IMG/VR virus record: IMGVR_UViG_3300025000_000053
Span: 185,854-249,853 of that record
Strand: one strand, 5' to 3'
DNA length: 64,000 nucleotides
Part shown: positions 3,001 to 62,102 of the stretch, one piece after another
How positions within the stretch are numbered: position 1 is the stretch's first letter
Layout: each line of letters opens with the position of its first letter
Notes under the pieces: generated by a model
The model's input: the letters and a program-made list of their open reading frames with translations, nothing else
The model's database searches: none
Told to the model about the DNA's origin: nothing
Position numbers and translations under genes: made by a program

Positions 3001-4234
3001 TAATGTTTCAGTAACTACAACTAATGATTCTAATAGTTTAACTAATTTTGTACCTAAAACTTTACAAGAATCTATTTTAAAGAAAACATTAGAATTATCA
3101 ATAGGTTCAGAATCATCAGGTGATTATACTAGTTCTAATAATGATATTAATGCATCAACAGGCAAAAAAATTTCTCCATCAATAGGTATTTTACAATGGA
3201 GAGGTAATAATGCTAAAACTTTAATGCAAAAAATGTATGAACAACTACCTGGTAATAGTGAGGCGAATTATTTTGCCAATCAAGTAGATTGGGGTAATAA
3301 AAGTCCTTGGAATGATATTCAAAGAGCAAGATTGAAAAAATACCTTGGAGATAATTTAAGTGTAAGTCAAAAAGTTCAAAATGAAATGGCATTATCACAT
3401 ATTAGAGATACAAATTTAGCACCAGTTTATAAATATGGTGTTAATACCAATAAAATAAAAGATCCGAGATCAATAGCATTTCTTGCTGATTTTGCTAATA
3501 CAGGACCAGCTCTTGTTAAACCATTTTTAGATAAATATAATCCAAATAATGGTGGAAAACCTGAATTTGAACATTTTATGGATGAATTTAAGAATAAGAG
3601 TTATTGGGGTAATAAAGGGATTTATGCTAGTAGAATAAAAAACACTTATTCTAAATTATCTGGATGGACTCCTGAAGTTGGTGGTAATGGTAGTTTTAAT
3701 ATATCATCTAATTTTGATAAAACTGCTGGTGGTTTTGGTGGAGAAGAACAAATTATACTCAATAGTAATAAAATTAATTTAGAAAGATTTACAGGTGGAT
3801 TAGGTGATTTATCAACATCTATTTCTAATAAATATAAAGGTGAAAACCTCGGAATTAATCGTAATATATTTGAAAGTTTAAATAATGGAACAGGTGAATA
3901 TATTACTAATAATAGTAATAATACACAAAGTTCAAATATATCAATAAATGAAATTGTTACTGTTTTAAAAGAAATTGCAATAAATACTAACACTACATCA
4001 AAAGGTATTAATGAATTAACTAATAAAGAAATAATAATTAATGTAGAAAATAAACCAAGTATAAATGATAATAACCAAAATAATACTATTAATCTAAATT
4101 CACAACAACCTAAAAACGCAACATTTGTCAGTCCGTTTTTTCAATCTATGAATGAAAGAAGTAATACTGGAAATAGTAAGGAACAACGAGAATATACAAT
4201 AGCTAAAAAAATAGCCGGTGGGAGAGTTAATTAA
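17..4234 (+). CDS. Tail tape-measure / tail-associated lysin with C39-like peptidase and lysozyme-like domains (probably 5'-truncated by the window edge)
   Basis: Long helical Ala/Gly/Lys-rich region. C39-like motifs YYSQYDDRW..GCGPTSMAMV..GHYVV..INDP (about 2300-2820). Second domain GSESSGDY..SIGILQW (about 3060-3670). Frame is open upstream of position 17. Confidence 0.75.
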   Translation: MYITGGVIDVVRRIGDNTSDFTQKPKDDNRSNIFDNSDNVVMPVRVDGVTSVRIVGSDRPIPIYFNMNMNQNQRRSNSFNNNISGLPNSINTGNNNYLVSSLTNALDIFDTENDKEEENKRIEKEREKELYQNQLEVSKKTSGFLIAQNNLRNEKDFTRNNEIRQTSLLQQIANISKNQHESWLSLFGKKGILTVAFLLTLPYLEKIFKWIKGFFGGDDDTGIGGGISTVVKKALGLIEKNDGSRKDAEDKDIINAQGRESYIKGTAVLARRYSPKLVKAIEKGKDKIANSNIVKNVTRYGSNLKNAFNPSSTVRGGTIDASFKVTDDTGKIIKEVTVNDSNKIIQAIKNTFERFFNNSFVKKLLGSSAGKIASKIINEVTKVLNYKTMFNNMAKLSKAFLRTGVIMFAAPVIISWDLATGAYEASRIFKVANESVDGKMQIASSVTKALIGFFPVIDILSEIFNEQTGMSLKQYVATTIYSMLASTEEIKKLEVDKKAFEQDKNEYNEKNKTKLSLNAYNDMKNKTFFQKFISNPLSKTKDFIVKTGSSISNSLSENWDNFKGGFSKGFKMMGDDVSNAMSKTPEMIKTFKDTLSKNWKELKDNSEKQWNNMKGFVSKSLKDTNNTLGILFGYKDEEGNDVSFTEGFNKGFKGLIKSIRDSWKDIGDGAKFYWDNTKAFTERKWKELSEKLPKAFESLDNWLGELLGFKDNDGNTLSLSDFASKQFNTIKKYLSNGKGSSTYSSGKGGNGNGGFGEEPNQLNNFTYYSQYDDRWGKTTYDLSKGHSSQPTLSARGCGPTSMAMVVSQLTGKRYEPPQLAKIAQEGGYSTNDGTTWGYFNKVAKDFSLDTSTVNPSNTINYLNNGMPVILSGKRDKYSFNDSPFTPGGHYVVAVGRDEKGNILINDPRGSKFSKPYNYNKVIKEARQGWAFSYNGGILPPNIVSSDNSNSSNKKLSTLDLFAKMIEAFTLYEENKRLGTNKKLSWDDIEGTSNDFNVSVTTTNDSNSLTNFVPKTLQESILKKTLELSIGSESSGDYTSSNNDINASTGKKISPSIGILQWRGNNAKTLMQKMYEQLPGNSEANYFANQVDWGNKSPWNDIQRARLKKYLGDNLSVSQKVQNEMALSHIRDTNLAPVYKYGVNTNKIKDPRSIAFLADFANTGPALVKPFLDKYNPNNGGKPEFEHFMDEFKNKSYWGNKGIYASRIKNTYSKLSGWTPEVGGNGSFNISSNFDKTAGGFGGEEQIILNSNKINLERFTGGLGDLSTSISNKYKGENLGINRNIFESLNNGTGEYITNNSNNTQSSNISINEIVTVLKEIAINTNTTSKGINELTNKEIIINVENKPSINDNNQNNTINLNSQQPKNATFVSPFFQSMNERSNTGNSKEQREYTIAKKIAGGRVN

Positions 4235-4249
4235 AAATAAAACCAAAAA

Positions 4250-4261
4250 AACATAATGATA
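4250..4261 (+). promoter_or_regulatory. Late promoter motif AACA-N6-TA (representative; 15 copies listed in findings)
   Basis: AACAtaatgaTA upstream of a tail gene. Confidence 0.6.
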
Positions 4262-4318
4262 AGATATTTAATTATATCTTCCATTATGTTTTTTAGATAT
4301 TTGAGGAGGTAAAAAATA

Positions 4319-6076
4319 ATGCGACAAGAAGTTAAAGTAGTAACTAAATCAAATTTAAATATACGTTCCGCAGCCGGAACAACTAACTCAGTAGTTGGTT
4401 CATTGACTCCTGGTTCAATAGTTATGGTTACAGGGATAGTCGATATTGGTACTCAAACATGGTATAAGCTAGACGATGGTAGAGGATGGATTTGTGGATA
4501 TAACCCAGGTGGTGGTGGAAATGGTGTTTATCTTGAATTAATTAGAGATTTAAATAATTTACCAGAAGTATCAATAACACCAGTACCGAATGATTCATCT
4601 ACCGGAACAGTTAGTGAAACTAGTAGTACTGCAACTAGTTTAGGTTTAGATCAAGCAATAATTACAATGTTATATAATCAGGAAAGAAGTAAAATTAAAA
4701 AAATATCTGCATCGACTAGATTATTTGGTTCACCCTTTCAATTTATTAAACAAACTGATTTTAGAATTAATGAATTAGATTTAGGTAGAAAATATTTAGA
4801 AAATATAATAGCTGAATCACCAATTGTTTTTTTTACTCCTGGTAGACCAAACTATTTACCTAATGTGTCATCCTCACAAAAAGAAGCACTACAAAAGTTT
4901 TTTACTAATATGCAAACTAATGAATCTACTTCTAAAAACATACTGAATGAAATAACTGGTAGTGATGATGTACGTTATTTTGATTTTATTAATGATTTTG
5001 CTGAATATATGAGATATGCTAATTTATTATGTAGAATGTGTGCTATATATCTAGGTATTGAAGATAAAAAAGCCTTTGGAACAAGCACAACATATAAGTA
5101 TTATGACTGGACTGATTATAAATATAAAACAGGCTATGTATCTAAAAATACCGAAGGTTCTAATAAATCTGTATTTTCTCTAGAATCTGTATCTGATGAT
5201 GCATTTGAATTAATGTTTGGTAACTATAACTATATACAATTTTATGTAGAACCAAACACTTCATTTAGTGAATCTATGGGAAGTAATACAACTAGTTCTA
5301 AATTAGAGTCTATGTTTGAAACGGGACAGGGTATAATGAAAGAACTTTCTTTCTTAACAAATGCTGCCGCTTTATCAGGTGTTGATGAAGCAACTAAATC
5401 TTTTGGTGTAAATATGGAAGAAATAACACAAAAAATGGTTAATAATAATGGTGAAGGTTTCTTTTCTAGATTACTAGGAATGTCTTCAGCTGTTTTAAAA
5501 GGTTCAAATATTTTATTTCCAGAAATTTGGCAAGATTCAAATTATAATAAATCATATAATGTAACTATTAATCTAGTTTCACCTTATGGTGATAAAGAAA
5601 GTTTATATTTAAATATTTTAGTTCCATTAATGCATATATTAGCTTTAAGTTTACCCCGTCAATCTACAGCAAATAGTTTCTCTCACCCTTTCTTAGTTAA
5701 AGCTTTTAGTAAAGGTTGGTTCTCATGTGAGATGGGAATAATTGATTCAGTTCAAATTGATAAAGGTGGTAGTGGGGATGCCTGGACTGTTGATGGTTTA
5801 CCATCAGAAATGAAAGTTACTATTGGTATAAAAGATCTTTATTCTAACTTAATGATAACACCTACAACTAAACCAACTTTATTTTTTGAAAACCAAGGGA
5901 TGATAGATTTCTTAGCTGTAATGTGTGGTATAGATTTAACTAAACCTAACTTCTTAATTAAATTAGAATCGATGTTTTCAGTATTTTTTGGTAAAGTTAT
6001 AAACTTACCTCAAGAGGCTTACAACGATGTTATTCAAAACCTTAGGGAAAAAATTTTACCATTATTCCGTATTTAA
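4319..6076 (+). CDS. Virion tail/baseplate protein with N-terminal SH3b domain
   Basis: LNIRSAAGTTNSVVGSL..WYKLDDGRGWI is SH3b-like. Follows the tape-measure gene and has a late promoter motif at 4250. Confidence 0.65.
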   Translation: MRQEVKVVTKSNLNIRSAAGTTNSVVGSLTPGSIVMVTGIVDIGTQTWYKLDDGRGWICGYNPGGGGNGVYLELIRDLNNLPEVSITPVPNDSSTGTVSETSSTATSLGLDQAIITMLYNQERSKIKKISASTRLFGSPFQFIKQTDFRINELDLGRKYLENIIAESPIVFFTPGRPNYLPNVSSSQKEALQKFFTNMQTNESTSKNILNEITGSDDVRYFDFINDFAEYMRYANLLCRMCAIYLGIEDKKAFGTSTTYKYYDWTDYKYKTGYVSKNTEGSNKSVFSLESVSDDAFELMFGNYNYIQFYVEPNTSFSESMGSNTTSSKLESMFETGQGIMKELSFLTNAAALSGVDEATKSFGVNMEEITQKMVNNNGEGFFSRLLGMSSAVLKGSNILFPEIWQDSNYNKSYNVTINLVSPYGDKESLYLNILVPLMHILALSLPRQSTANSFSHPFLVKAFSKGWFSCEMGIIDSVQIDKGGSGDAWTVDGLPSEMKVTIGIKDLYSNLMITPTTKPTLFFENQGMIDFLAVMCGIDLTKPNFLIKLESMFSVFFGKVINLPQEAYNDVIQNLREKILPLFRI

Positions 6077-40173: not shown

Positions 40174-40554
40174 ATGTTGAATGATATTATTTCTGTATTC
40201 AATCAGCTTACTCGTAATGAGTTGGCTGATTGTTCATTATTTGAAAATATTATTAATAGACATTATGAAAAATTTAAATATTTTTACTTTATTATAGATA
40301 ATATTAGCTTAAAGAATATAATAGACATTAAATGTCAGGAAGAATCAACACGATTAAATATTTCCATCTCATTTAAAACAAAAAAAGAAAGAGATTTATT
40401 TTTTAATATATTTAATAATAAGATTAATAATAATTGTAATTTTAAATATAAAGATTATTTTATTTTCAAAATTATAAAAGATACTAAATCTATTAATGTA
40501 ACAATAGAAAATAATGATATTATAGTAGAAGAGGTGTTGTATGGATGCAAATAG
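40174..40554 (+). CDS. Hypothetical protein
   Basis: Overlaps the start of the RNAP gene. Confidence 0.5.
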   Translation: MLNDIISVFNQLTRNELADCSLFENIINRHYEKFKYFYFIIDNISLKNIIDIKCQEESTRLNISISFKTKKERDLFFNIFNNKINNNCNFKYKDYFIFKIIKDTKSINVTIENNDIIVEEVLYGCK

Positions 40555-42803
40555 AACTCTTTGATACTAAGAAATTTATCGAAGTGAATAACTTAAGAGA
40601 GGTAACAAATTTAATATTATTTGAAAAAGGAAATATCCCAACTGTTGATGGTTTATTATCAACAGATATATTTGGGGTATCATCTAGAGAAAGAAAAGAA
40701 ACATATGCTTATATTGATTTACACGGACATTTCTTACATCCATTTATATTTAAGACATTAAAACGAATGAATAGAAAATTTGAATCTGCTATATATGGGA
40801 ATATAAATTTTATAATTAAAGATGGTGAATTAGTTGAAGATGAAAACGGAGAAAGTGGAATAGACTTTTTATATAAAAATTGGGAAAAATTTAATTTTGA
40901 ACGAAATAATAGTATGATGCGTAATGAAAGAATTTCTGTTTTAGAATCATATAAAAAAAATGTTTTATTTACTAAGTATTGGATTGTTATGCCAGCTTTT
41001 TTTAGAGATGTGAATTTACAATTTGCAGCTGAAGGAAGAGTATCTCACCATGAGATAAATGATAAATATTCTAAGTTAATTAGGTTTGCTTCTATAATTA
41101 TTAATAACAATTTTGATTTTGTTCTAAATACAACTAAAGCAAAAATTCAAGAAACTCTTGTTGAAATCTACGATTTACTTAAAGGTAAGATAGAAAAGAA
41201 ACAAGGGTTGATTCGTAAATCATTATTAGGTAAATCAATAGATTTTGGCGTTAGGAGTGTAAATTTACAATGCACGTGATTCTTTAATTGTCGGGGAAGC
41301 CCTTTAAATCTCTTACTACCAAACTATAATAGCAATATTATAGTGGCGAAGGGTAATGCCTTAGGTATGGTAACAAGGTAAGAAATTAGGTAATCCGCAG
41401 CTAAGATTCTAATATATTAATATTATTAGAATAAAGTTCAACGACTATCTGATGACGCTACTTTTAGTAGAGTAGGAGTAGACTCACAAGTCAATTAATG
41501 GTGAGTTGAAATGGGAAACCATCAAAAAGATGAAGATATAGTCTAGTATCCTAGTGAAAACTAGGGAAGTTCATTAGAGAACTGCATAGTCTGACGAACT
41601 ATGTGAATACAACGAATTTCTGCACCAATATTCAAAGCGAATAAATCAGAAGATATGAAAGTCGATTTTTATAATTGTGGTATACCATTATCACAATGCT
41701 GTTCATTATGCACACCATATATGATAACTTGGGTGAAAAGATTCTTTCAGAGGGAATTAGAAAGACTTTATATGAAATATCCGGTTAAATTAAAAACAGA
41801 AGAGATTATTTATGTTAAATTAAAATCACCTGAGTTATTTTTTAATGATGAATATATTGAAAAGCAAATTAATAAATTTATTTCTAGTTATGGTGATAGA
41901 TTTGAAAAAATCAAATTACCTATAGATGATCCTAAATATGAAAAAAATATTTATTTAAGTTTTATTGGAAGAGAATTTATTAAAGGTGTTCCAGAAACAG
42001 AATCACCTTTAATACAAAGACCTGCTACATGGTGTGATATTTTATATCAAGCAGCAGTTGAAATTACTTCTGATAAACATGTTTATGTAACACGATATCC
42101 TGTTTTAGATTATTTCGGTACTTTTCCTAATAAAATTCATGTTTTATCAACTCATGAAACTATTCCAATGTTTGTTGGTTCTAGGGTATATGAGCACTAC
42201 CCTAAAATAGATATTAAAATGCCTAAAGAAAAAGTTTCTATTACCTTTGCTGATACAGTAACAATGTCAAACCTGTATTTAACAGGTCTTGGTGGAGACT
42301 ACGATGGTTCTTTAAATGCCCACTTATATGGTGACATATATGTGAATCTTCTTTAATTGTCGGGGAGGCTCTTAGAGCTTTTTATTATATAATAAAAAGA
42401 TTGGGTAATCCGCAGCTAAGATTCTAATATATTAATAATATATTAGAATAAAGTTCAACGACTATCCCTAGGTACTGAAATGTACAACAGGAGTAGGGCT
42501 CAAGTGAGTGGGTGAAAATCCCTTAAATCGAAATAGGAAGCACCTCCTATAAGGTGATGATATAGTCTAGTATCCTAGTGAAAGCTAGGGAAGTTCATAA
42601 GAGAACTGCATAGAATAACGACCTATGTGAATATATCGGATCAAGTATCTTTAAAGGTTTTATTTTCACAAGAAGCTAATCTTGAGGCAGATAGAATTAT
42701 GAAATCAAAAGGTCATATTCTTAATATCTATGGACAAAATATGAGAAAGACAACAAATGAAGGTGCTCATACTTTATTTATGTTAACAAAGTTTAATAAA
42801 TAA
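40545..42803 (+). CDS. rpoC: RNA polymerase beta' N-terminal subunit (probably virion RNAP), spliced from exons 40545-41260, 41615-42308, 42639-42803 (524 aa)
   Basis: GLIRKSLLGKSIDFGVRS-V-ISAP and GGDYDG-DQV are restored only after removing two group I introns. Frames checked; stop codon at 42801-42803. Confidence 0.85.
41261..41614 (+). mobile_element. Group I intron 1 (354 nt, ORF-less)
   Basis: P aattgtcgggga, Q aatccgcagc, R gttcaacgacta, S aagatatagtct. P1 gugu|a pairs with ugcac, giving a U.G pair at the splice site. Terminal G at 41614. Confidence 0.9.
42309..42638 (+). mobile_element. Group I intron 2 (330 nt, ORF-less), inside the catalytic DYDG/D motif
   Basis: P/Q/R/S elements present. 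The exon ends in U (ggt), the intron ends in G, and splicing restores DYDGD. Confidence 0.9.
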
Positions 42804-45817: not shown

Positions 45818-46837
45818 TTAACTTCTTTTATATATAGTTATATAAGGTGATGTACTATGTGCTACAACTAGATAAATACTATCTGGTGAGAAAGAACATC
45901 CATTACCAGTACCTGTAGGTAATATATCCGGATCAGATAATTTAGTAAATGTATCTCCACTTCTTTTATATATAGTTATATAAGGTGATGTACTATGTGC
46001 TACAACTAGATAAATAATATCTGGTGAGAAAGAACAACCATAACCAACACCTGTGGGTAATATACTAGGATTAGCCAATTTAGTAAATGTATCACCACTT
46101 CTTTTATATATAGTTATATATGGTGATGTATTATGTGCCACAGCTAGATAATTATTATCTGGTGAGAAAGAACAACCATAACCAACACCTGTGGGTAATA
46201 TATCTGGATCAGGTAATTTAGTAAAAGTATCTCCACTTCTTTTATATATAGTTATATATGGACTATTGTTATGTCCTACAACTAAATAATTATTATCTGG
46301 TGAGAAAAAACAACCATAACCAGTACCTATAGGTAGTACACTAGGATTATCTAATTTAGTAAAAGTATCACCAGATCTTTTATATATAGTTATATATGGA
46401 CTATTTTTATGTGATATAGCTAAATAATTATTATCTGATGAAAAAGAACAATCAAAACCTTGTCCTGTAGGTAATATACTAGGATCAGGTAATTTAGTAA
46501 ATGTATCACCACTTCTTTTATATATAGTTACATATGGTGAAATATAATGTGCTACAGTTAAATAATTATTATCTGGTGAGAAAGAACAACCATAACAATA
46601 CCCTGGAGGTAATACACTTGGATCAGGTAATTTAGTAAAGGTATCACCATCTCTTTTATATATAGTTATATAAGGTGATGTATCATGTCCTACAGCCAAA
46701 TAATTATTATCTGATGAAAAAAAACTTTCATAAGCATTGTTAGTAGGTAATATACTAGGATTATCTAATTTAGTAAATATACCACCAATATTACTATTAT
46801 TTTTAAAACTACTCATTAATATTAAGTTACTTAACAT
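45818..46837 (-). CDS. Seven-bladed beta-propeller repeat protein
   Basis: Seven 46-aa repeats FTKLxDPxILPTGxGYGCSFSPDNNYLxVxHxxSPYITIYKRSGDT. Real start is probably the ATG at 46837 (SD gaaagg; late motif 46865-46876). Confidence 0.85.
   Translation of the reverse strand: MLSNLILMSSFKNNSNIGGIFTKLDNPSILPTNNAYESFFSSDNNYLAVGHDTSPYITIYKRDGDTFTKLPDPSVLPPGYCYGCSFSPDNNYLTVAHYISPYVTIYKRSGDTFTKLPDPSILPTGQGFDCSFSSDNNYLAISHKNSPYITIYKRSGDTFTKLDNPSVLPIGTGYGCFFSPDNNYLVVGHNNSPYITIYKRSGDTFTKLPDPDILPTGVGYGCSFSPDNNYLAVAHNTSPYITIYKRSGDTFTKLANPSILPTGVGYGCSFSPDIIYLVVAHSTSPYITIYKRSGDTFTKLSDPDILPTGTGNGCSFSPDSIYLVVAHSTSPYITIYKRS
45821..46780 (-). repeat. 138-bp tandem coding repeat, 7 copies
   Basis: Period read directly from recurring cttttatatatagtta at about 45963 and 46101, etc. 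Confidence 0.9.
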
Positions 46838-46950
46838 ATTAATCAACCTTTCTTTATAAGTATTTAATATAATGTTGAAAAGTATTAGAAACATAAAAAT
46901 AAATAAATCAGTATGTTAAAATAAAATACATACTGATTTATTTATTAAAT

Positions 46951-55089: not shown

Positions 55090-55596
55090 TTAATTATTAA
55101 TAATTTCATATACTTTAGAGTATGATTTTTTTTCTTCTGTCAATACAACTTTATTAAATAAAAAATCTTTTTTCATAGTTATACTGCTTAGAATAAAGTG
55201 CTTAAACCATTTACTGTCTTTCGGATGTTCTAATAAGTTTCTAATAATTGAATATATTGAATATTTGTGACCATTTCTATTAGTCCTTTCAAAAGTAAAA
55301 ATACTTTTATCAGAAAAATCTGGATTTTTACCAAAAACTCGATGTATTTCTTTTAGAAATCTTTTTGACCTCTTTTTTAATAATAAAAATTCCCTACGTG
55401 AACAGTTAGAACCTAATATGCTTTTCTTTCGATTACCTTGTAAAACAATAGTTTTAGCTACCTTATAGATAAAATGACAAGTTTTTTCATTGAGTATATT
55501 AAAAAATCCTACTAAACCTTTTGAGAATTTTGTTAAAACCTCTTTAAGATTATTAGTAGCTTTAACTAATATTTCACTATCAATATTTAAATTCAT
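55090..55596 (-). CDS. Basic hypothetical protein, tandem paralog B
   Basis: MNLNIDSEILVKATNNLKEVL..KKRSKRFLKEIH. Confidence 0.6.
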   Translation of the reverse strand: MNLNIDSEILVKATNNLKEVLTKFSKGLVGFFNILNEKTCHFIYKVAKTIVLQGNRKKSILGSNCSRREFLLLKKRSKRFLKEIHRVFGKNPDFSDKSIFTFERTNRNGHKYSIYSIIRNLLEHPKDSKWFKHFILSSITMKKDFLFNKVVLTEEKKSYSKVYEIINN

Positions 55597-55617: not shown

Positions 55618-56055
55618 TTAATTAGTTTTAGGATGATCAAATTCACCATACCAGATGTTATTAAATTTTTCTATATTATTTTTTAATCTATTTATACCAT
55701 AACACCTATTATTCCTATTTAACCATGTAAGATTCCCGTCTAAAAAAGATGGATGTTTCCCATATACCTTATGGATAAATTTTAAAAATCTCTTAGCTCG
55801 TTTTTTCATTAATAAAAATTTTTTACGAGAATGAAATTTTCCACAAAATCCAAATTTGCGATTATGTTTTATTATTTTAATAGCCATATTATAGTAAAAT
55901 CTTAAAGTTAAATCAGATTTTCTAATAAAAAAAGCATTATGAAAATTCATTAATTTTTCAGTAAAATCACAAAATGAATATTTTAGTTTTAATAAAACCT
56001 CTTTAAGATTATTAATAGCTTTAACTAATATTTCACTATCAATATTTAAATTCAT
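55618..56055 (-). CDS. Basic hypothetical protein, tandem paralog A
   Basis: MNLNIDSEILVKAINNLKEVL..KKRAKRFLKFIH. Confidence 0.6.
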   Translation of the reverse strand: MNLNIDSEILVKAINNLKEVLLKLKYSFCDFTEKLMNFHNAFFIRKSDLTLRFYYNMAIKIIKHNRKFGFCGKFHSRKKFLLMKKRAKRFLKFIHKVYGKHPSFLDGNLTWLNRNNRCYGINRLKNNIEKFNNIWYGEFDHPKTN

Positions 56056-56069
56056 TAATTTTCACCCCC

Positions 56070-58351
56070 TTATATTTTTAGAATATTACTATAGTAATCA
56101 TCTTCAGTTGTCTTAATAATTCCAATACCCAAACTATCTAATACACCATGGAACGTAGATAAATTATTATTTATAATTGTACTATAATCAATAAAAGGAA
56201 TTATCCAATTTGGTATCTTAGGTATATTTCTAGGCAAAGCTATAACTTTAACTCCTTTCTCTCTTATTTTCTTATCACTATTATTATATATATTTTCAAT
56301 TATCCTTTCATATATTTCAGGCTCAGATTGTTTTATTTTTTCAATAGAGTTTTCATCCATATTAACCTTAATAATATCAATGTGTTCAGGTAGTTCTATT
56401 GAATTATCAGGATAAGCATAATTCCATGCTAAAACAGCACGGACACCCATTTCTCTTAATGGATCTTTATATGCTTCTAATTCTTTTACTGATTTAGGAA
56501 TTAGAAAATCTTTTTGACCTGATTCTAGAGATATTCTAATTATATTTTCTAATTTTTCTAATTCTTTTAAAACATTAGATATATTAATTTCTTCAGTTGA
56601 TAATAAATGTTCTTTAATAAGATTTTTAAAGAATTTTTCTGTTGCTTCTCTTGTTGATGACTTAACAAAATCTAACGTAGTGTTCACATAGGTCGTTAAT
56701 CTATGCAGTTCTCTTATGAACTTCCCTAAGTTTCCCTAGGATACCAGACTATATCTTCATCCTTATTATATAACTAATAAGGAGCCTCCCATTTCGATTT
56801 AAGGGATTTTCACCCACTCACTTGAGCCCTACTCCTATTGATCATTTCAGATCCAAAGGGATAGTCGTTGAACCTTTCTCTTATATTAGAGACTTGGCTG
56901 CTGATTACCCAATATTTTAGTTTATTACCTTTATCTTAAGGTACTAAAATCTATAAGGATTTTCCAGCAGTTAAAGAGGTTTTCTTTATATATTACTATA
57001 TAAAGGAGCAATATTTATTACCCTTAATATCAACTTTTTCAGGATATATTTCATCTCCTTCTCTTAATCTAACACTACTTATATATCTTTTCTTTTTCTG
57101 TGTTAAAATAAGTCTAGTGAATAAAAATTCATTTTTCATATTTATTTTATGTCTATATCTTTTAGGTATATTTACATCTTTAGTATATTTCTTCAATGTA
57201 TTAGTAACCATATTAGTTATTATATAAGCCAATAAGTTGATAGAAATAAATTTTAATTCAGTTTTATCCTTATTTATTAATTTATCATTAACATCGATAA
57301 TATTATATTTAATAAATTTAACCCATTTATCAATAGTCATAATAGTTGAATCTGTATCTGAACCAACTACAGTTTTTCTTTCATCATATTTTAATCTACG
57401 AATCCTATTATATGGAGAAAAATTAAAGAAAACAAATTCTTTATATAGTTTCCATAATAGTTCTAAATCATCTTTTACGTTATTAGGTATCTTATTAGGA
57501 TTTTTAAATGTATCAATATTTTCTATAATATATGATAATAAGTTTCTTATTTTTCTTAATTTTGAAAATTCAAAAATGTTATTCTTATAGTAAATTCTAT
57601 TAATATCTTTTTGACTTAAAGATAATAAATAATTTAAAATAAAAGAATTATACTCTTTTTTATAATTAAAAAATCTTTTCTTTAAATATTTCATTAATTG
57701 TTTTGAACTAATATTTTCTAAAAAATTATCATTTAAATTTCTTTTTTCCTTAATTACATTAGTTAAAAAAAACACACATTCTTCAAGATTATTAAATGGA
57801 GCATTATTTTCTAAAAAAGTTTCAAAAGCCATTTCAGCTGTAGCTATTAATGATTGGCCGGAGTTTGTAATAGAACTGGCGGTGTATAAATTATAAAAAT
57901 TAGATGTTGGGGCTCCGTTGGACCCGAAGAACGAGTTTGCGTTGGTTTTCTCAGAACCTTGTAACCTATCAAATGTCCCATATTCATAATCATCTTTTGA
58001 ATATTTTTTTAATTGATTTTTATACTCTTTTCTTAACGACATAAAGTTTTCTAGCATAACAGCGGCTGGATTCAATGATTCATCTTGATTTTTAAAAAAT
58101 ACTCCGAATCCAGCAACTATAGGTTTAGTTTTTTTAACCCAATCATATACTGATATTAAATCTACATTAATAGATTTATGAATATAGTTATTATGAATTA
58201 TAGCTTTAGGGTTAATTAAGTTTTTATCTATAATATCATCTAAAACTTTTGATATATCTTTATTTGTTAGTTCAGGATACATTCTTTTAAATATCTCTAT
58301 ATTACTTTCTTTCCAATCTTTTATAAATAAACTTTTAATTTTTTTAGATAT
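56070..58351 (-). CDS. polB: Family B DNA polymerase, C-terminal polypeptide of a split enzyme; exons 58351(or 58282)-57020 and 56675-56070
   Basis: EKTNANSFFG (motif B), GSDTDS (motif C), KKRY, and DIKG-LDFVKSST restored after splicing. Motif A (DxxSLYP) is absent. Confidence 0.85.
56676..57019 (-). mobile_element. Group I intron 3 (344 nt, ORF-less) in the DNA polymerase gene
   Basis: On the minus strand: P aactgctggaaa, Q aatcagcagc, R gttcaacgacta, S aagatatagtct. The exon ends ggt and the intron ends in G; frame restored. Confidence 0.9.
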
Positions 58352-59064: not shown

Positions 59065-62000
59065 ATGTTATTGGAAAATAATATAAAAGAAATTATTGGT
59101 TTATTAAGTAACAAAGTATTTATTATTTCAGAAATAATGGAAACTAGAAAAACTTTTAATGAGAATCTAGAGACAATTTATGATTATTTAAAACAAGGTT
59201 TTGAAATTAAAGAATTAAGAACATGTCCAACTTACTTTAGATTTAAAGAAGATGGTTATATACACACTTTACAATTAAGACATTTTCTTACCAACTTGAT
59301 GTTTTGGGAACCATTAATGAGATTTGATTGTTCAGATAAGTTAGATGAAACTTATATTGTTGATTGTACTAAAATGTCATCTAAATTAATTAAAAATTAT
59401 ATTGATAATAAAATTGTTATACCTTATAGAAGAATAATCGAAAATAAGAAAATGAATAAAGTTATTCATGATATGATTTATAATCTATCAAGAATATCAA
59501 CAGATTTTAATATTATATTAGGATTGTCTATTAATGTTGAGACATTTATTGATGTTGCAAAAAGAAATCCAAGATTTAATGAGATTATTAGGACTCAATT
59601 AAATGAAGATATGCAACCAACTGAGATTGAGGAATATTTAGATAAATTGATGCATGAACAAATAGAAATCTTAAAAAATGATGATAAAGATAATTTATTA
59701 AAACCAATACTTAAATCAGGTGCTGGTATTAAAAGTAAACAATTGTCAGAATTCTCAATATCTGGCGGGTTAAAAATTAGCCCCGTACATAGGCGACTAT
59801 GTGCGTAAACCTCTTTAATTGCTGGGACTCTCTTAAAATATTCTTCTACCAGAATATTAATAAAAGTTGGTGTTGATATTGAAGCTAGTTAATATCGATT
59901 ATGATAAAAAGAAGAAGTTATATATAGTTACCTTTTTTAAAAATAAGGGTGGTTATAAAATAAGAACTAAAAGATTTACTTATTCTGAAGATAGTCATGG
60001 ACCTTTCGCTAGGATTCTTGCTTTACATACAATGAAGACAGGTGAGAGACTTTATCATTGGTTTGTGACTGACGGTATATATACATCTATTTTTATATAT
60101 AATAAAAAATATGGTTTTAGACGTATGTTAATCGATAATGAATTTATTGACATCGTCAAAAATCATAGGATTAATATAATTAAAAATAAAACTGGTCAGA
60201 ATATATTTTATGCGACAATAAAAATAAACGGTAAGAATGTCCCTGTACATCGTCTTATTATGGGTCTAGGAGAATATAGAAATGATCCTGTAGATCATGT
60301 ATTTCATGATTCTTTAGATAATATGAAATTAAATCTACGTGTCTGTACTCCTAGTATTAATAATAGGAATTCAAGATTACGATGTGACAGTAAAACTGGT
60401 ATACAGGGAGTTTGTTTTAATAAAAATAAATGCTCGTATACCGCAGAAGTTAGAGATTTTAATGGTAGAAAAATTAGAAAAAGCTTTCCCATAAAACTTT
60501 ATGGTGAAAATAAAGCCATTGAATTAGCAAAACAATGGCGTGAAATTATGGTAGAAGAATATTATGAGAGACAATCAGCAGCGAAGCCTGATTATTAGTC
60601 AGGAACGTTCAACGACTATCCAAAGCATGTTCATTATTGATATAAAATATAATGAACATAAGCGAGTAGAGTAGGACTAGAAGCTAATGCTAGTTCCAAA
60701 CGGGAGGCATCTCACTGAGATGATGATATAGTCTAGTATCCTAAAGTGATTTAGGGAAGTTCATAAGAGAACTGTATAGGGGTTGCGTCCTATATGAATG
60801 ATCGTAAAACCAAATATTTCTGGTACTACTATCCCTATACCTATTAATAGTAATTATATCGTAGGTGGATTGAGGAATATAACTAATTATTATATAGATT
60901 CTCTCGGTGGTCGCAAATCATTGATTATGAGTAAGCTTGAGATGGGAAATTCTGGGCATTTCGCACGTACTGTGATGCTATTAGTTTCCAGTATTAATTT
61001 ATCTAAAACAGTCGAATCATGTAATACTGTACATCCAATAAAAATTGAATTAACAACTAAAGACCATTTAATAAGAATGCGGGGTAGATATTATCGAACC
61101 ATGTATTCTAGAAATTATCAATTATTAAAAGGTGATGAATATAATTTAATAGGGGAAACTATTTTTGTTAAATCACCAGTTACTTGTGCTTGTAAAGATG
61201 GGATATGTAAAATGTGTTATGGTGAATTATCATATATAAATAATGATATTTCAATAGGTGTATATGCTGGTACAAAAATCACAGAACCAGTTTCACAAAA
61301 TATTTTATCCTCTAAACATTTATTAACAACTAAATCAGAAAAAATACAATTTAATGAAGAATTCTATAGATTTTTTAATATAAGTGGTAATGAAATAATT
61401 ATTAATCCAAATGATGATTTAGATAATTTAGATGATTATAGTTTACTTATAATTAAAAGTAATATTAAAACAATAGCTGATTATGATGATAATGATATGG
61501 AATTTAATGAATATGTAAATCTATTCCATGTATATAATAAGAAAACTAATGAGATGATAGAAATAAAAGAAAGTAGAGATAAAGATTTATATATCTCTCC
61601 TGAATTAAGAAAATTATTTAAGAAAAAAAGTAAAAAGGAAGTTTATGAAATTGATTTTAAAAATATTGATGATGATAGAATTTTTGTTATAGAAGTAGTT
61701 AATAATGAGTTAACCCGTCCACTATATGATATTATGCGTTTAATTGATAGGGTTGACTATAGAATCATACATTGGAACTGTGTTACAATTGATCAAATGT
61801 GTCAAAAGATGTTAGATTTAATAATAGAGTCTGAAATTAATTCTGACTCTGTTCATGGTGAATTAATTTTAACACCATTATTAAGAGATAAAGATGATAT
61901 ATTAGAAAGACCTAAATTTAATAAGTACTTTAATGGTGATGAAGGATACCAAATTCTAACAGTTAAATCTGCTTTAGAAAAACATCCATCAGTATTAGTT

Positions 62001-62102
62001 GGTTTATCATTCCAAGCACTTGATAGACAATTAACAAACCCATTAACATTTAGAAAAAAGGAAAGTTCATTTATTGATCCTTTCTTTAAAGAAAGACCAT
62101 AA
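59065..62102 (+). CDS. rpoC: RNA polymerase beta' C-terminal subunit (probably non-virion RNAP), exons 59065-59770 and 60805-62102 (667 aa)
   Basis: Splicing gives GGL-KPNISG. Bridge-helix-like GL..YY..GGRKSL..SGHFAR and Zn site SPVTC..ICKMCYG are present. Confidence 0.8.
59771..60804 (+). mobile_element. Group I intron 4 (1034 nt) carrying a homing endonuclease
   Basis: P1 gggu|u pairs with agccc (U.G at the junction). P aattgctggga, Q aatcagcagc, R gttcaacgacta, S gatatagtct; terminal G at 60804. Confidence 0.9.
59867..60598 (+). CDS. Intron-encoded HNH homing endonuclease with AP2-like DNA-binding domain(s)
   Basis: VHRLIM..VDHVFHDSLDN..NLR (HNH); SKTGIQGVCF..YTA..KSF..YG..AIELA (AP2). 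Confidence 0.85.
   Translation: MVLILKLVNIDYDKKKKLYIVTFFKNKGGYKIRTKRFTYSEDSHGPFARILALHTMKTGERLYHWFVTDGIYTSIFIYNKKYGFRRMLIDNEFIDIVKNHRINIIKNKTGQNIFYATIKINGKNVPVHRLIMGLGEYRNDPVDHVFHDSLDNMKLNLRVCTPSINNRNSRLRCDSKTGIQGVCFNKNKCSYTAEVRDFNGRKIRKSFPIKLYGENKAIELAKQWREIMVEEYYERQSAAKPDY

What the first reader, a model, noticed from the sequence alone, without database searches (positions are those of the whole stretch)
42291..42660. Intron interrupts the RNAP catalytic DxDGD motif
Seen: GGT GGA GAC TAC GAT GGT | intron | GAT CAA GTA gives GGDYDG-DQV. The ORF track stops at DYDGSL and misses the last 54-codon exon. Established: DxDGD binds the catalytic Mg2+. Inference: unspliced mRNA yields a dead subunit, so splicing is an absolute gate, and the ultra-conserved site is ideal for homing.
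Basis: partly seen in the sequence, partly recalled or inferred. Interest (0 to 1): 0.65.

Follow-up and report, generated by a model that had tools for sequence, protein, structure and literature searches.

The report
Self-splicing intron splits phage RNA-polymerase active site
A 330-base self-splicing group I intron with no endonuclease gene sits inside the codons for the catalytic DxDGD motif of a giant phage's virion RNA-polymerase beta' gene, a site already known to carry introns in cultured relatives such as AR9, Madawaska and phiR1-37.

Summary
GGT GGA GAC TAC GAT GGT ends at 42308. A 330-nt group I intron follows at 42309-42638 (Rfam RF00028, 76.4 bits, E 1.3e-17). GAT CAA GTA starts a 54-codon last exon at 42639.

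The three exons (40545-41260, 41615-42308, 42639-42803) tile without gap or overlap onto uninterrupted homologues, which read GGDYDGDQV/TV. A second, related intron (41261-41614) lies in the same gene.

The gene is the N-terminal beta' subunit of the virion RNA polymerase of an AR9/PBS1-like jumbo phage: 249,853 bp, 24.5% GC, from a groundwater metagenome, with at least 12 group I introns.

The kind is known.
- AR9 gene 145 carries an endonuclease-bearing group I intron one codon upstream (DYD|GD).
- Staphylococcus phage Madawaska (annotated) and Yersinia phage phiR1-37 (not annotated) have introns at exactly DxDG|D.

New here: among relatives, six different codon-boundary insertion points fall within 18 nt of this motif. 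Their introns carry GIY-YIG, HNH/NUMOD4, other or no endonuclease genes, and one lineage has two introns separated by a 9-nt micro-exon.

The window's copy has no endonuclease gene, so it cannot home by itself. No RNA data exist, so splicing is inferred, not shown.

The parts
40545..41260 (+). Exon 1 of the virion RNAP beta'-N gene. It ends ...GVRS plus GT of the split Val codon.
   Evidence: tblastn with BpSp gp212 residues 1-243. phrog_2986 'RNA polymerase beta subunit', profile positions 8-250, E 2.4e-52.
41261..41614 (+). Intron 1, a 354-nt group I intron without an ORF. It splits RSV|ISAP.
   Evidence: RF00028 57.1 bits. 5' splice site after U41260 with P1 GUGU/GCAC and a terminal G at 41614. 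96.5% identical on both flanks to the HNH/NUMOD4-bearing intron at the same site in L005.
41615..42308 (+). Exon 2. It ends GGT GGA GAC TAC GAT GGT (GGDYDG).
   Evidence: tblastn residues 244-452 of gp212. phrog_2986 profile positions 252-487, E 2.3e-26.
42309..42638 (+). Intron 2, the finding: a 330-nt group I intron with no endonuclease gene, inserted in phase 0 between Gly and the third Asp of DxDGD.
   Evidence: RF00028 76.4 bits, E 1.3e-17, full model. No ORF of 20 aa or more lies wholly inside it. Five core motifs are identical to the consensus of the genome's other introns. Orthologous to L006 intron B, 81% over the full length.
42306..42320 (+). P1: exon GGU (42306-42308) pairs with the guide GCC (42318-42320), with the U42308-G42318 wobble at the 5' splice site.
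   Evidence: The minimum-energy fold of 42297-42324 gives exactly these 3 pairs. They are weak, -1.1 kcal/mol, no better than shuffles. The register is fixed by orthologues L006_B and L011_B, where the base after the U is not U.
42638..42638 (+). Terminal G of intron 2 (omega-G), the 3' splice site.
   Evidence: Sequence. It is the only position that restores GGDYDG|DQV colinear with homologues.
42453..42567 (+). Catalytic core: J6/7-P7 (GTTCAACGACTA at 42453), a roughly 69-nt insert between the P7 5' strand and the P3 3' strand (position of P7.1/P7.2 in subgroup IA), P8, and J8/7-P7 (GATATAGTC at 42559).
   Evidence: Rfam alignment and motif scan.
42639..42803 (+). Exon 3: 54 codons (DQVSLK...TKFNK) plus the stop codon.
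   Evidence: tblastn residues 453-503 of gp212. 98% identical to exon 3 of L005 and L006. Alignment.

Best explanation
[quoted passage not shown] It is probably subgroup IA-like and belongs to a family of at least 12 related introns in this 250-kb AR9-like jumbo phage. [quoted passage not shown]

The gene is transcribed as a precursor with two introns. Each intron is expected to remove itself by the usual two transesterifications. Guanosine attacks after U42308, which is held in P1 by the guide GCC. The exon's 3' OH then attacks after the terminal G42638. This joins GAT GGT to GAT CAA and gives ...GLGGDYDGDQVSLK....

Without splicing, translation stops 15 codons into the intron, and the product lacks the third aspartate and the C-terminal 53 residues. 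Only spliced mRNA can therefore give an active subunit.

The site is one of six adjacent codon boundaries in this motif that carry introns in related phages. The likely reason is that homing endonucleases target invariant DNA. This copy has lost, or never had, its endonuclease gene and persists by vertical descent.

Shown: the RNA family match, the splice-site rules and colinearity with intronless homologues. Inferred: actual splicing, the subgroup and the history.
For: Rfam RF00028 scores 76.4 bits, E 1.3e-17, over the full model. Exon ends follow group I rules, with U before the 5' site and G before the 3' site. The three exons tile onto intronless BpSp gp212, LPJP1 rpoC1, L008, L012, L021 and L026 with no gap at GGDYDG|DQV.

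A profile of the intronless relatives hits solved RNAP beta' chains. The best is AR9 non-virion RNAP 7S01_d, E 1.5e-18, with the motif aligned to its GDYDGD. Exons 1 and 2 match phrog_2986 positions 8-250 and 252-487.

AR9 g145 is annotated 'virion RNAP subunit ... N-terminus' and joined from 3 pieces, with a group I-type intron at DYD|GD carrying homing endonuclease g146. Madawaska has an annotated join with a homing endonuclease at DFDG|D, and phiR1-37 has the same site occupied. A preprint states that the AR9 exon junctions were determined experimentally on mature mRNA (10.1101/2020.12.14.422802). NAR 2025, PMC12350094, Fig. [quoted passage not shown]

Orthologous introns at the same site in L006 and L011 have guide sequences that match their own exon.
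Against: There is no RNA evidence. Only DNA runs from one groundwater study hold the sequence. P1 is only 3 base pairs and scores no better than shuffled sequence, and I found no convincing P10. Pfam gives no hit on the exons themselves, so the RNAP assignment rests on homologues, PHROGs and the profile of relatives.
Confidence: 0.93

Rival explanations
1. The element is a group I intron, but it splices one base further on at both ends (after U42309 and after G42639). That would give GGT TAT CAA, that is DYDGYQ.
For: The Rfam alignment register can be read with U42309 opposite G42318. Both shifted positions still obey U-before and G-before.
Against: It destroys the third Asp, which is invariant in all six intronless relatives (D470, D472, G473 and D474 are invariant). 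In orthologues L006_B and L011_B the base after the splice-site U is A or C, so no shifted site exists there. The minimum-energy fold pairs U42308 with G42318.
Confidence: 0.02
2. The intron no longer splices. Either the gene is dead, or it is expressed as separate polypeptides, with the last piece starting at GTG 42627 (MNISDQVSLK...), as beta' is already split in these phages.
For: An ORF 42627..42803 with a GTG start exists. P1 is weak. No endonuclease gene is present, which fits a decaying element.
Against: All core motifs are intact and the model matches end to end. The exons are under clear protein constraint: 94-98% amino-acid identity to L005 and L006 against about 92% DNA identity to L005 in exon 2. 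The virion RNAP is annotated as a virion or structural protein in AR9 and phiR1-37. A break inside the Mg2+-binding loop would separate the three aspartates onto two chains. No relative has a gene boundary there without intron hallmarks.
Confidence: 0.03
3. The interruption is another kind of element: an intein, a group II intron or a translational bypass.
For: AR9's first intron in the same gene is group II. Inteins are reported in gyrase A of related Staphylococcus phages.
Against: The insert has in-frame stops and no ORF, so it is not an intein. Rfam places it in RF00028, and no group II model matched in the window.
Confidence: 0.005

Closest known systems
Group I intron in Bacillus phage AR9 gene 145 (virion RNAP beta'-N), carrying 'Hef-like homing endonuclease' g146
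   Same: It is in the orthologous gene and the same catalytic motif, and it is a group I-type intron obeying the U/G splice rules. Its 3' part shares sequence with the window's intron, 78% over 64 nt including GTTCATAAGAGAAC.
   Different: AR9's intron lies one codon upstream (DYD|GD against DYDG|D) and is about 1.87 kb with a 495-aa endonuclease ORF. The window's intron is 330 nt with no ORF. AR9's other intron in this gene is group II and sits at a different site.
Introns at DFDG|D in Staphylococcus phage Madawaska (annotated join, homing endonuclease CPT_Madawaska_114) and Yersinia phage phiR1-37 (g178, not annotated)
   Same: The insertion point is exactly the same, after GGT of Gly and before GAT of the third Asp. 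Both obey the U/G rules and share exact J6/7-P7 and J8/7-P7 core motifs.
   Different: They are 1472 and 1413 nt long and contain ORFs. Outside the core motifs there is no detectable similarity to the window's intron, so they are either very old orthologues or independent invasions.
PhiPA3 gp210 intron in the virion RNAP beta subunit (Birkholz et al., Science 2024, PMC11620839)
   Same: It is a group I intron in a jumbo-phage virion RNAP gene, placed next to conserved acidic residues. Its endonuclease cuts the intronless allele of a co-infecting phage.
   Different: It is in a different subunit (beta, not beta') and a different phage family (Chimalliviridae), and it carries an active HNH nickase. 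The window's intron encodes nothing.
Group I introns of Twort-like Staphylococcus phages (endolysin gene) and N4-like Vibrio phages
   Same: These are the nearest DNA matches among cultured phages to the 3' half of the window's intron: 80% over about 130 nt and 96% over 46 nt.
   Different: They sit in other host genes, and most have an HNH endonuclease ORF beside or inside them.

Membership tests
Group I catalytic intron (Rfam RF00028) | Covariance-model score above the curated gathering score over the whole model | tested here: met
   76.4 bits against 50, E 1.3e-17, model positions 1-253.
Group I catalytic intron (Rfam RF00028) | 5' splice site after a U that forms a U-G wobble with the internal guide in P1 | tested here: met
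   U42308-G42318, G42307-C42319 and G42306-C42320. This is only 3 pairs and weak in isolation.
Group I catalytic intron (Rfam RF00028) | Terminal guanosine (omega-G) at the 3' end | tested here: met
   G42638 lies directly before GAT CAA.
Group I catalytic intron (Rfam RF00028) | Exon ligation restores a reading frame colinear with intronless homologues | tested here: met
   checked exon by exon. The joined sequence itself was not built for any search.
Group I catalytic intron (Rfam RF00028) | Self-splicing shown on RNA | not testable with these tools
   Only DNA runs hold the sequence.
Subgroup IA (phage-type) group I intron | Extra P7.1/P7.2 helices between the P7 5' strand and the P3 3' strand | tested here: inconclusive
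   The Rfam alignment shows a roughly 69-nt insert at that position. Its helices were read by eye only.
Mobile (homing) group I intron | Intron-encoded homing endonuclease | tested here: not met
   No ORF of 20 aa or more lies wholly inside 42309-42638. GIY-YIG is absent from the genome, and HNH_3/NUMOD4 ORFs occur only at about 17.9, 52.3 and 74.1 kb of the genome. The nearest endonuclease-like ORF in the window is 59867-60598, in another intron.
Mobile (homing) group I intron | Intron-plus and intron-minus alleles among relatives | tested here: met
   L008/9, L012, L021, L026/27, BpSp, LPJP1 and Goe21 are intronless at this site. L006 and L011 carry the orthologous intron.
Multisubunit RNAP beta' (DPBB domain with DxDGD), virion RNAP beta'-N of AR9-like phages | Sequence homology to the annotated subunit and to solved beta' chains, with the motif aligned | tested here: met
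   tblastn to AR9 g145, BpSp gp212 and others. phrog_2986. The profile of relatives hits 7S01_d and bacterial beta', with GDYDGD aligned. Pfam alone gave nothing.
Multisubunit RNAP beta' (DPBB domain with DxDGD), virion RNAP beta'-N of AR9-like phages | Packaged in virions | not testable with these tools
   This rests only on annotation of the orthologues: AR9 'virion RNAP subunit' and phiR1-37 g178 'phage structural protein'.

The most novel reading that the evidence does not exclude
The 18 nt encoding G-D-x-D-G-D of the virion RNAP beta' may be a contested landing site. At least six intron lineages, with different or no endonuclease genes (GIY-YIG, HNH/NUMOD4, AR9's 'Hef-like', none), each occupy a different codon boundary. 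Sometimes two sit together with a 9-nt micro-exon between them. Occupancy by any one intron disrupts the recognition sequence of the rivals' endonucleases. On this reading, even an ORF-less intron such as the window's acts as immunity against cleavage by co-infecting relatives, as an extension of the PhiPA3 gp210 interference idea, and is kept for that reason rather than being mere debris.
Probability: 0.3. Interest if true: 0.6.

Novelty: new member of a known kind. Interest (0 to 1): 0.4.

Why it matters
For annotation, ORF callers truncate this essential polymerase subunit at DYDG and miss its last exon. The same error stands in the public record of Yersinia phage phiR1-37.

For biology, the finding is ordinary as a single case, because group I introns in RNAP genes of AR9-like jumbo phages are published. 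The comparison set found here is less ordinary. It has six insertion points in 18 nt and closely related phages (92% DNA identity in exon 2) carrying unrelated introns 3 nt apart. It also has versions of one intron with and without the endonuclease gene, and twin introns around a 9-nt exon. This is a compact natural system for studying how homing endonucleases and introns compete for one invariant target.

Tried and rejected
- Pfam on the three exons gave no family. The assignment was reached through PHROGs, tblastn and a profile of relatives.
- Sequencing runs: only four DNA runs from one groundwater study hold the region, and none is RNA.
- Laying contigs of X1 and X3 gave short pieces that break at the introns. 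No joint 42308|42639 appeared, so there is no intronless DNA allele of this strain. The listed joints link paralogous intron copies and look like repeat artefacts. Intron bins are 300-1800 deep against 7-90 for exons, which reflects many copies.
- The AR9 genome paper (Lavysh 2016) is not held. The AR9 exon ends were therefore derived from the record's DNA.
- Rfam did not detect the endonuclease-bearing introns of relatives or AR9's intron B, presumably because long ORFs split the core. They were supported instead by core motifs, U/G rules and hand-read P1 pairings.
- The P1 fold of the window's intron is not better than shuffles.
- I looked for P10 by eye and found nothing convincing.
- An intein or a group II intron was rejected.
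- The joined (spliced) protein was not built, searched or folded. All work was exon by exon.

Full report
**Observation**

GGT GGA GAC TAC GAT GGT occupies 42291-42308 and GAT CAA GTA occupies 42639-42647. The mechanical ORF 41655..42356 reads ...GLGGDYDGSLNAHLYGDIYVNLL* and so runs 15 codons into the insert. The frame 42639-42800 is 54 codons, followed by a stop.

Rfam's group I intron model (RF00028) matches 42299-42590 end to end at 76.4 bits (gathering score 50, E 1.3e-17). It also matches 41199-41566 at 57.1 bits, so the gene has two introns.

**Exact anatomy**

| Part | Coordinates | Notes |
|---|---|---|
| Exon 1 | 40545-41260 | |
| Intron 1 | 41261-41614 | 354 nt; splits RSV\|ISAP, with the Val codon split GT\|A |
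| Exon 2 | 41615-42308 | |
| Intron 2 | 42309-42638 | 330 nt, phase 0 |
| Exon 3 | 42639-42803 | includes the stop codon |

Both 5' sites follow a U and both introns end in G.

The uninterrupted orthologue of Bacillus phage BpSp (gp212, 504 aa) aligns to the window in three colinear pieces. They end and start at residues 243/244 and 452/453. In a multiple alignment with six intronless homologues, the three exons tile with neither gap nor overlap: GGDYDG then DQVSLK, against GGDYDGDQVTVK or GGDYDGDTVSLR.

A one-base shift of both sites would give DYDGYQ and lose an invariant Asp. That shift is also impossible in the orthologous introns of L006 and L011, where the base after the splice-site U is A or C.

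**The gene**

Pfam finds nothing in the exons. Other evidence identifies the gene:
- Exons 1 and 2 match PHROG 2986 'RNA polymerase beta subunit' at profile positions 8-250 and 252-487 of 539.
- tblastn finds the beta' genes of AR9, PBS1, BpSp, Goe21, LPJP1, the Staphylococcus jumbo phages, phiR1-37 and Fusobacterium phages.
- AR9 g145 is annotated 'virion RNAP subunit ... beta'-subunit, N-terminus'.
- phiR1-37 g178 is annotated 'phage structural protein'.
- A profile of six intronless relatives hits solved beta' chains. The best is AR9 non-virion RNAP (7S01_d, E 1.5e-18), followed by bacterial beta'. The motif aligns to that chain's GDYDGD.

That DxDGD binds the catalytic Mg2+ is established knowledge (restated in PMC7598289).

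**The genome**

The window is bases 185854-249853 of a 249,853-bp IMG/VR virus record rated 100% complete. Its GC content is 24.5%. It is found only in DNA runs of one groundwater study.

It holds 12 RF00028 matches above the cut-off and 16 at E of 0.001 or less. Most are 70-81% identical to intron 2 over 250-330 nt. The introns therefore form one expanded family.

**The intron itself**

- No ORF of 20 aa or more lies wholly inside it.
- The core strings J3/4-P4, P4-P6, J6/7-P7, J8/7-P7 and a 3' hairpin (GTTCATAAGAGAAC) are all present without mismatch.
- P1 is only GGU/GCC with the U42308-G42318 wobble. Alone it is no better than shuffled sequence. This is the weakest point of the model.
- A roughly 69-nt insert between the P7 5' strand and the P3 3' strand sits where subgroup IA introns carry P7.1/P7.2. 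I read this by eye only.
- The nearest DNA matches in cultured phages are the 3' halves of introns in Twort-like Staphylococcus phages (endolysin gene) and N4-like Vibrio phages.

**What is already known**

AR9 g145 is recorded as a three-piece join. Its first intron is group II (as published in PMC12350094).

Its second intron carries endonuclease g146. It starts after GAC TAC GAT and ends ...TTTTG before GGT GAT ACA. That is DYD|GD, one codon upstream of the window's site.

Staphylococcus phage Madawaska has an annotated join with a homing endonuclease at GAC GGT | ... ATG | GAT ATG, which is exactly DFDG|D. Yersinia phage phiR1-37 has GAT GGT | 1413 nt | GAT ACA at the same point. Its record ends g178 at that point, and g179 lies within the insert.

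A preprint on the Staphylococcus phages states that RNAP subunit genes of these phages are often split by introns. It also states that the AR9 junctions rest on experimentally determined mature mRNA. Birkholz et al. showed that an intron endonuclease in a jumbo-phage virion RNAP beta gene serves in competition between phages.

The finding is therefore a new member of a known kind.

**What the comparison adds**

Twenty-three IMG/VR loci encode relatives with 37-94% identity in exon 2. Mapping the exons on them gives six different insertion points, all at codon boundaries within 18 nt.

| Site | Loci |
|---|---|
| GG\|DYDGD | L014/15, L022 |
| GGD\|YDGD | L016-20, L006/7 intron A, L010/11 intron A |
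| GGDY\|DGD | L023-25 |
| GGDYD\|GD | L013, AR9 |
| GGDYDG\|D | window, L006 intron B, L010/11 intron B, Madawaska, phiR1-37 |
| GGDYDGD\|Q | L005 |
| Intronless | L008/9, L012, L021, L026/27, BpSp, LPJP1, Goe21 |

At each site the intron starts after a U. A guide sequence a few bases inside the intron complements the local exon, for example CGACUAU/GUAGUCG in L023 and GGAGAU/GUCUCC in L016. I read these pairings by hand. All the introns end in G except L006/7 intron A.

Rfam confirms L013 (91.8 bits), L006 B (76 bits) and L011 B (69.8 bits). The longer introns carry ORFs:
- L005: GIY-YIG.
- L011 intron A: GIY-YIG.
- L014: NUMOD4.
- L023: NUMOD4 plus HNH_3.
- L022: no family found.

In these 23 loci the only other intron site in the gene is site 1.

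A rough, post hoc calculation follows. It counts about nine distinct sites across all relatives, including AR9's group II site and an unresolved one in Machias. Six of nine falling in one 7-codon stretch of a roughly 520-codon gene has a probability of about 5e-10 under uniform placement.

**History hints**

L005 is the closest relative found, with 92% DNA identity in exon 2. It carries an unrelated GIY-YIG intron 3 nt downstream of the window's site, and nothing at the window's site.

At site 1, the window's intron is 96.5% identical on both flanks to L005's intron. L005's intron additionally holds an HNH/NUMOD4 ORF. Versions of one intron with and without the endonuclease gene, and replacement of one intron by another at adjacent sites, fit the classical cycle of invasion, endonuclease loss and re-invasion.

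The window's intron 2 has no endonuclease in cis. The genome's three HNH_3/NUMOD4 ORFs lie far away, and GIY-YIG is absent.

**Mechanism and limits**

Splicing is inferred from family membership, the splice rules and colinearity. No RNA data exist.

It follows from the sequence that unspliced mRNA gives a truncated product lacking the third Asp. That this serves as regulation is not supported by anything seen here.

Everything was done exon by exon, by reference.

Noticed in passing
window 41261-41614: There is a second group I intron in the same gene (57.1 bits), splitting RSV|ISAP. It is the ORF-less form of the HNH/NUMOD4-bearing intron at the same site in L005, 96.5% identical on both flanks.
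   Followed up: yes
window 56070-58282 (- strand); intron about 56688-56995: A family-B DNA polymerase gene (Pfam divDNApol/DNA_pol_B) is split by a group I intron. The intron scores 87.9 bits in the whole-genome search but was not listed by the gathering-threshold scan of the window.
   Followed up: partly
window 59065-62102 (+): Another RNAP beta'-type gene (Rpb1 domain 5 in 60798-62102) appears split by a roughly 990-nt insert. The insert holds an AP2-domain ORF (59867-60598, likely an HNH-AP2 type homing endonuclease) and a group I 3' core (60482-60756, 38 bits).
   Followed up: partly
G000 (whole genome): 85051-85357/85410-85727 and 177368-177713/177732-178088: The genome has at least 12 group I introns. 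Two pairs of Rfam matches lie only 18-52 nt apart, which suggests further tandem introns with very short exons. The contig also begins inside a partial intron (131-189).
   Followed up: no
L011 3688-5060 (same in L010): Two introns lie inside the DxDGD codons. A 1109-nt GIY-YIG intron follows GGA GAT and a 255-nt intron follows GGT. They are separated by a 9-nt micro-exon TAC GAC GGT (4797-4805). Both obey the U/G rules and have matching guide sequences.
   Followed up: partly
L006 3685-4059 (identical in L007): The intron at GGD|YDG ends in A (…GGTAAAATA|TAT), where its homologues in L011 and L016 end in G. No nearby G gives an in-frame DxDGD. Either splicing is impaired, a terminal A is tolerated, or both assemblies share an error.
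   Followed up: partly
L033 (Yersinia phage phiR1-37, AJ972879.2) 3628-5040: The public annotation ends g178 (RNAP beta') at DFDGKF*. A 1413-nt insert with exact group I core motifs and ORF g179 follows, and the last exon (DTFRLIGLF...) starts at 5041, overlapping the small ORF g181. This is an unannotated intron.
   Followed up: partly
window 45818-46894 (- strand): A 358-aa ORF is made of about seven copies of a roughly 44-residue repeat (...SPYITIYKRSGDTFTKLPDPSILPTG...), possibly a beta-propeller.
   Followed up: no
window 55090-55596 and 55618-56055 (- strand): Two adjacent ORFs begin with nearly the same 22 residues (MNLNIDSEILVKA.NNLKEVL). They look like tandem paralogues just downstream of the DNA polymerase gene.
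   Followed up: no
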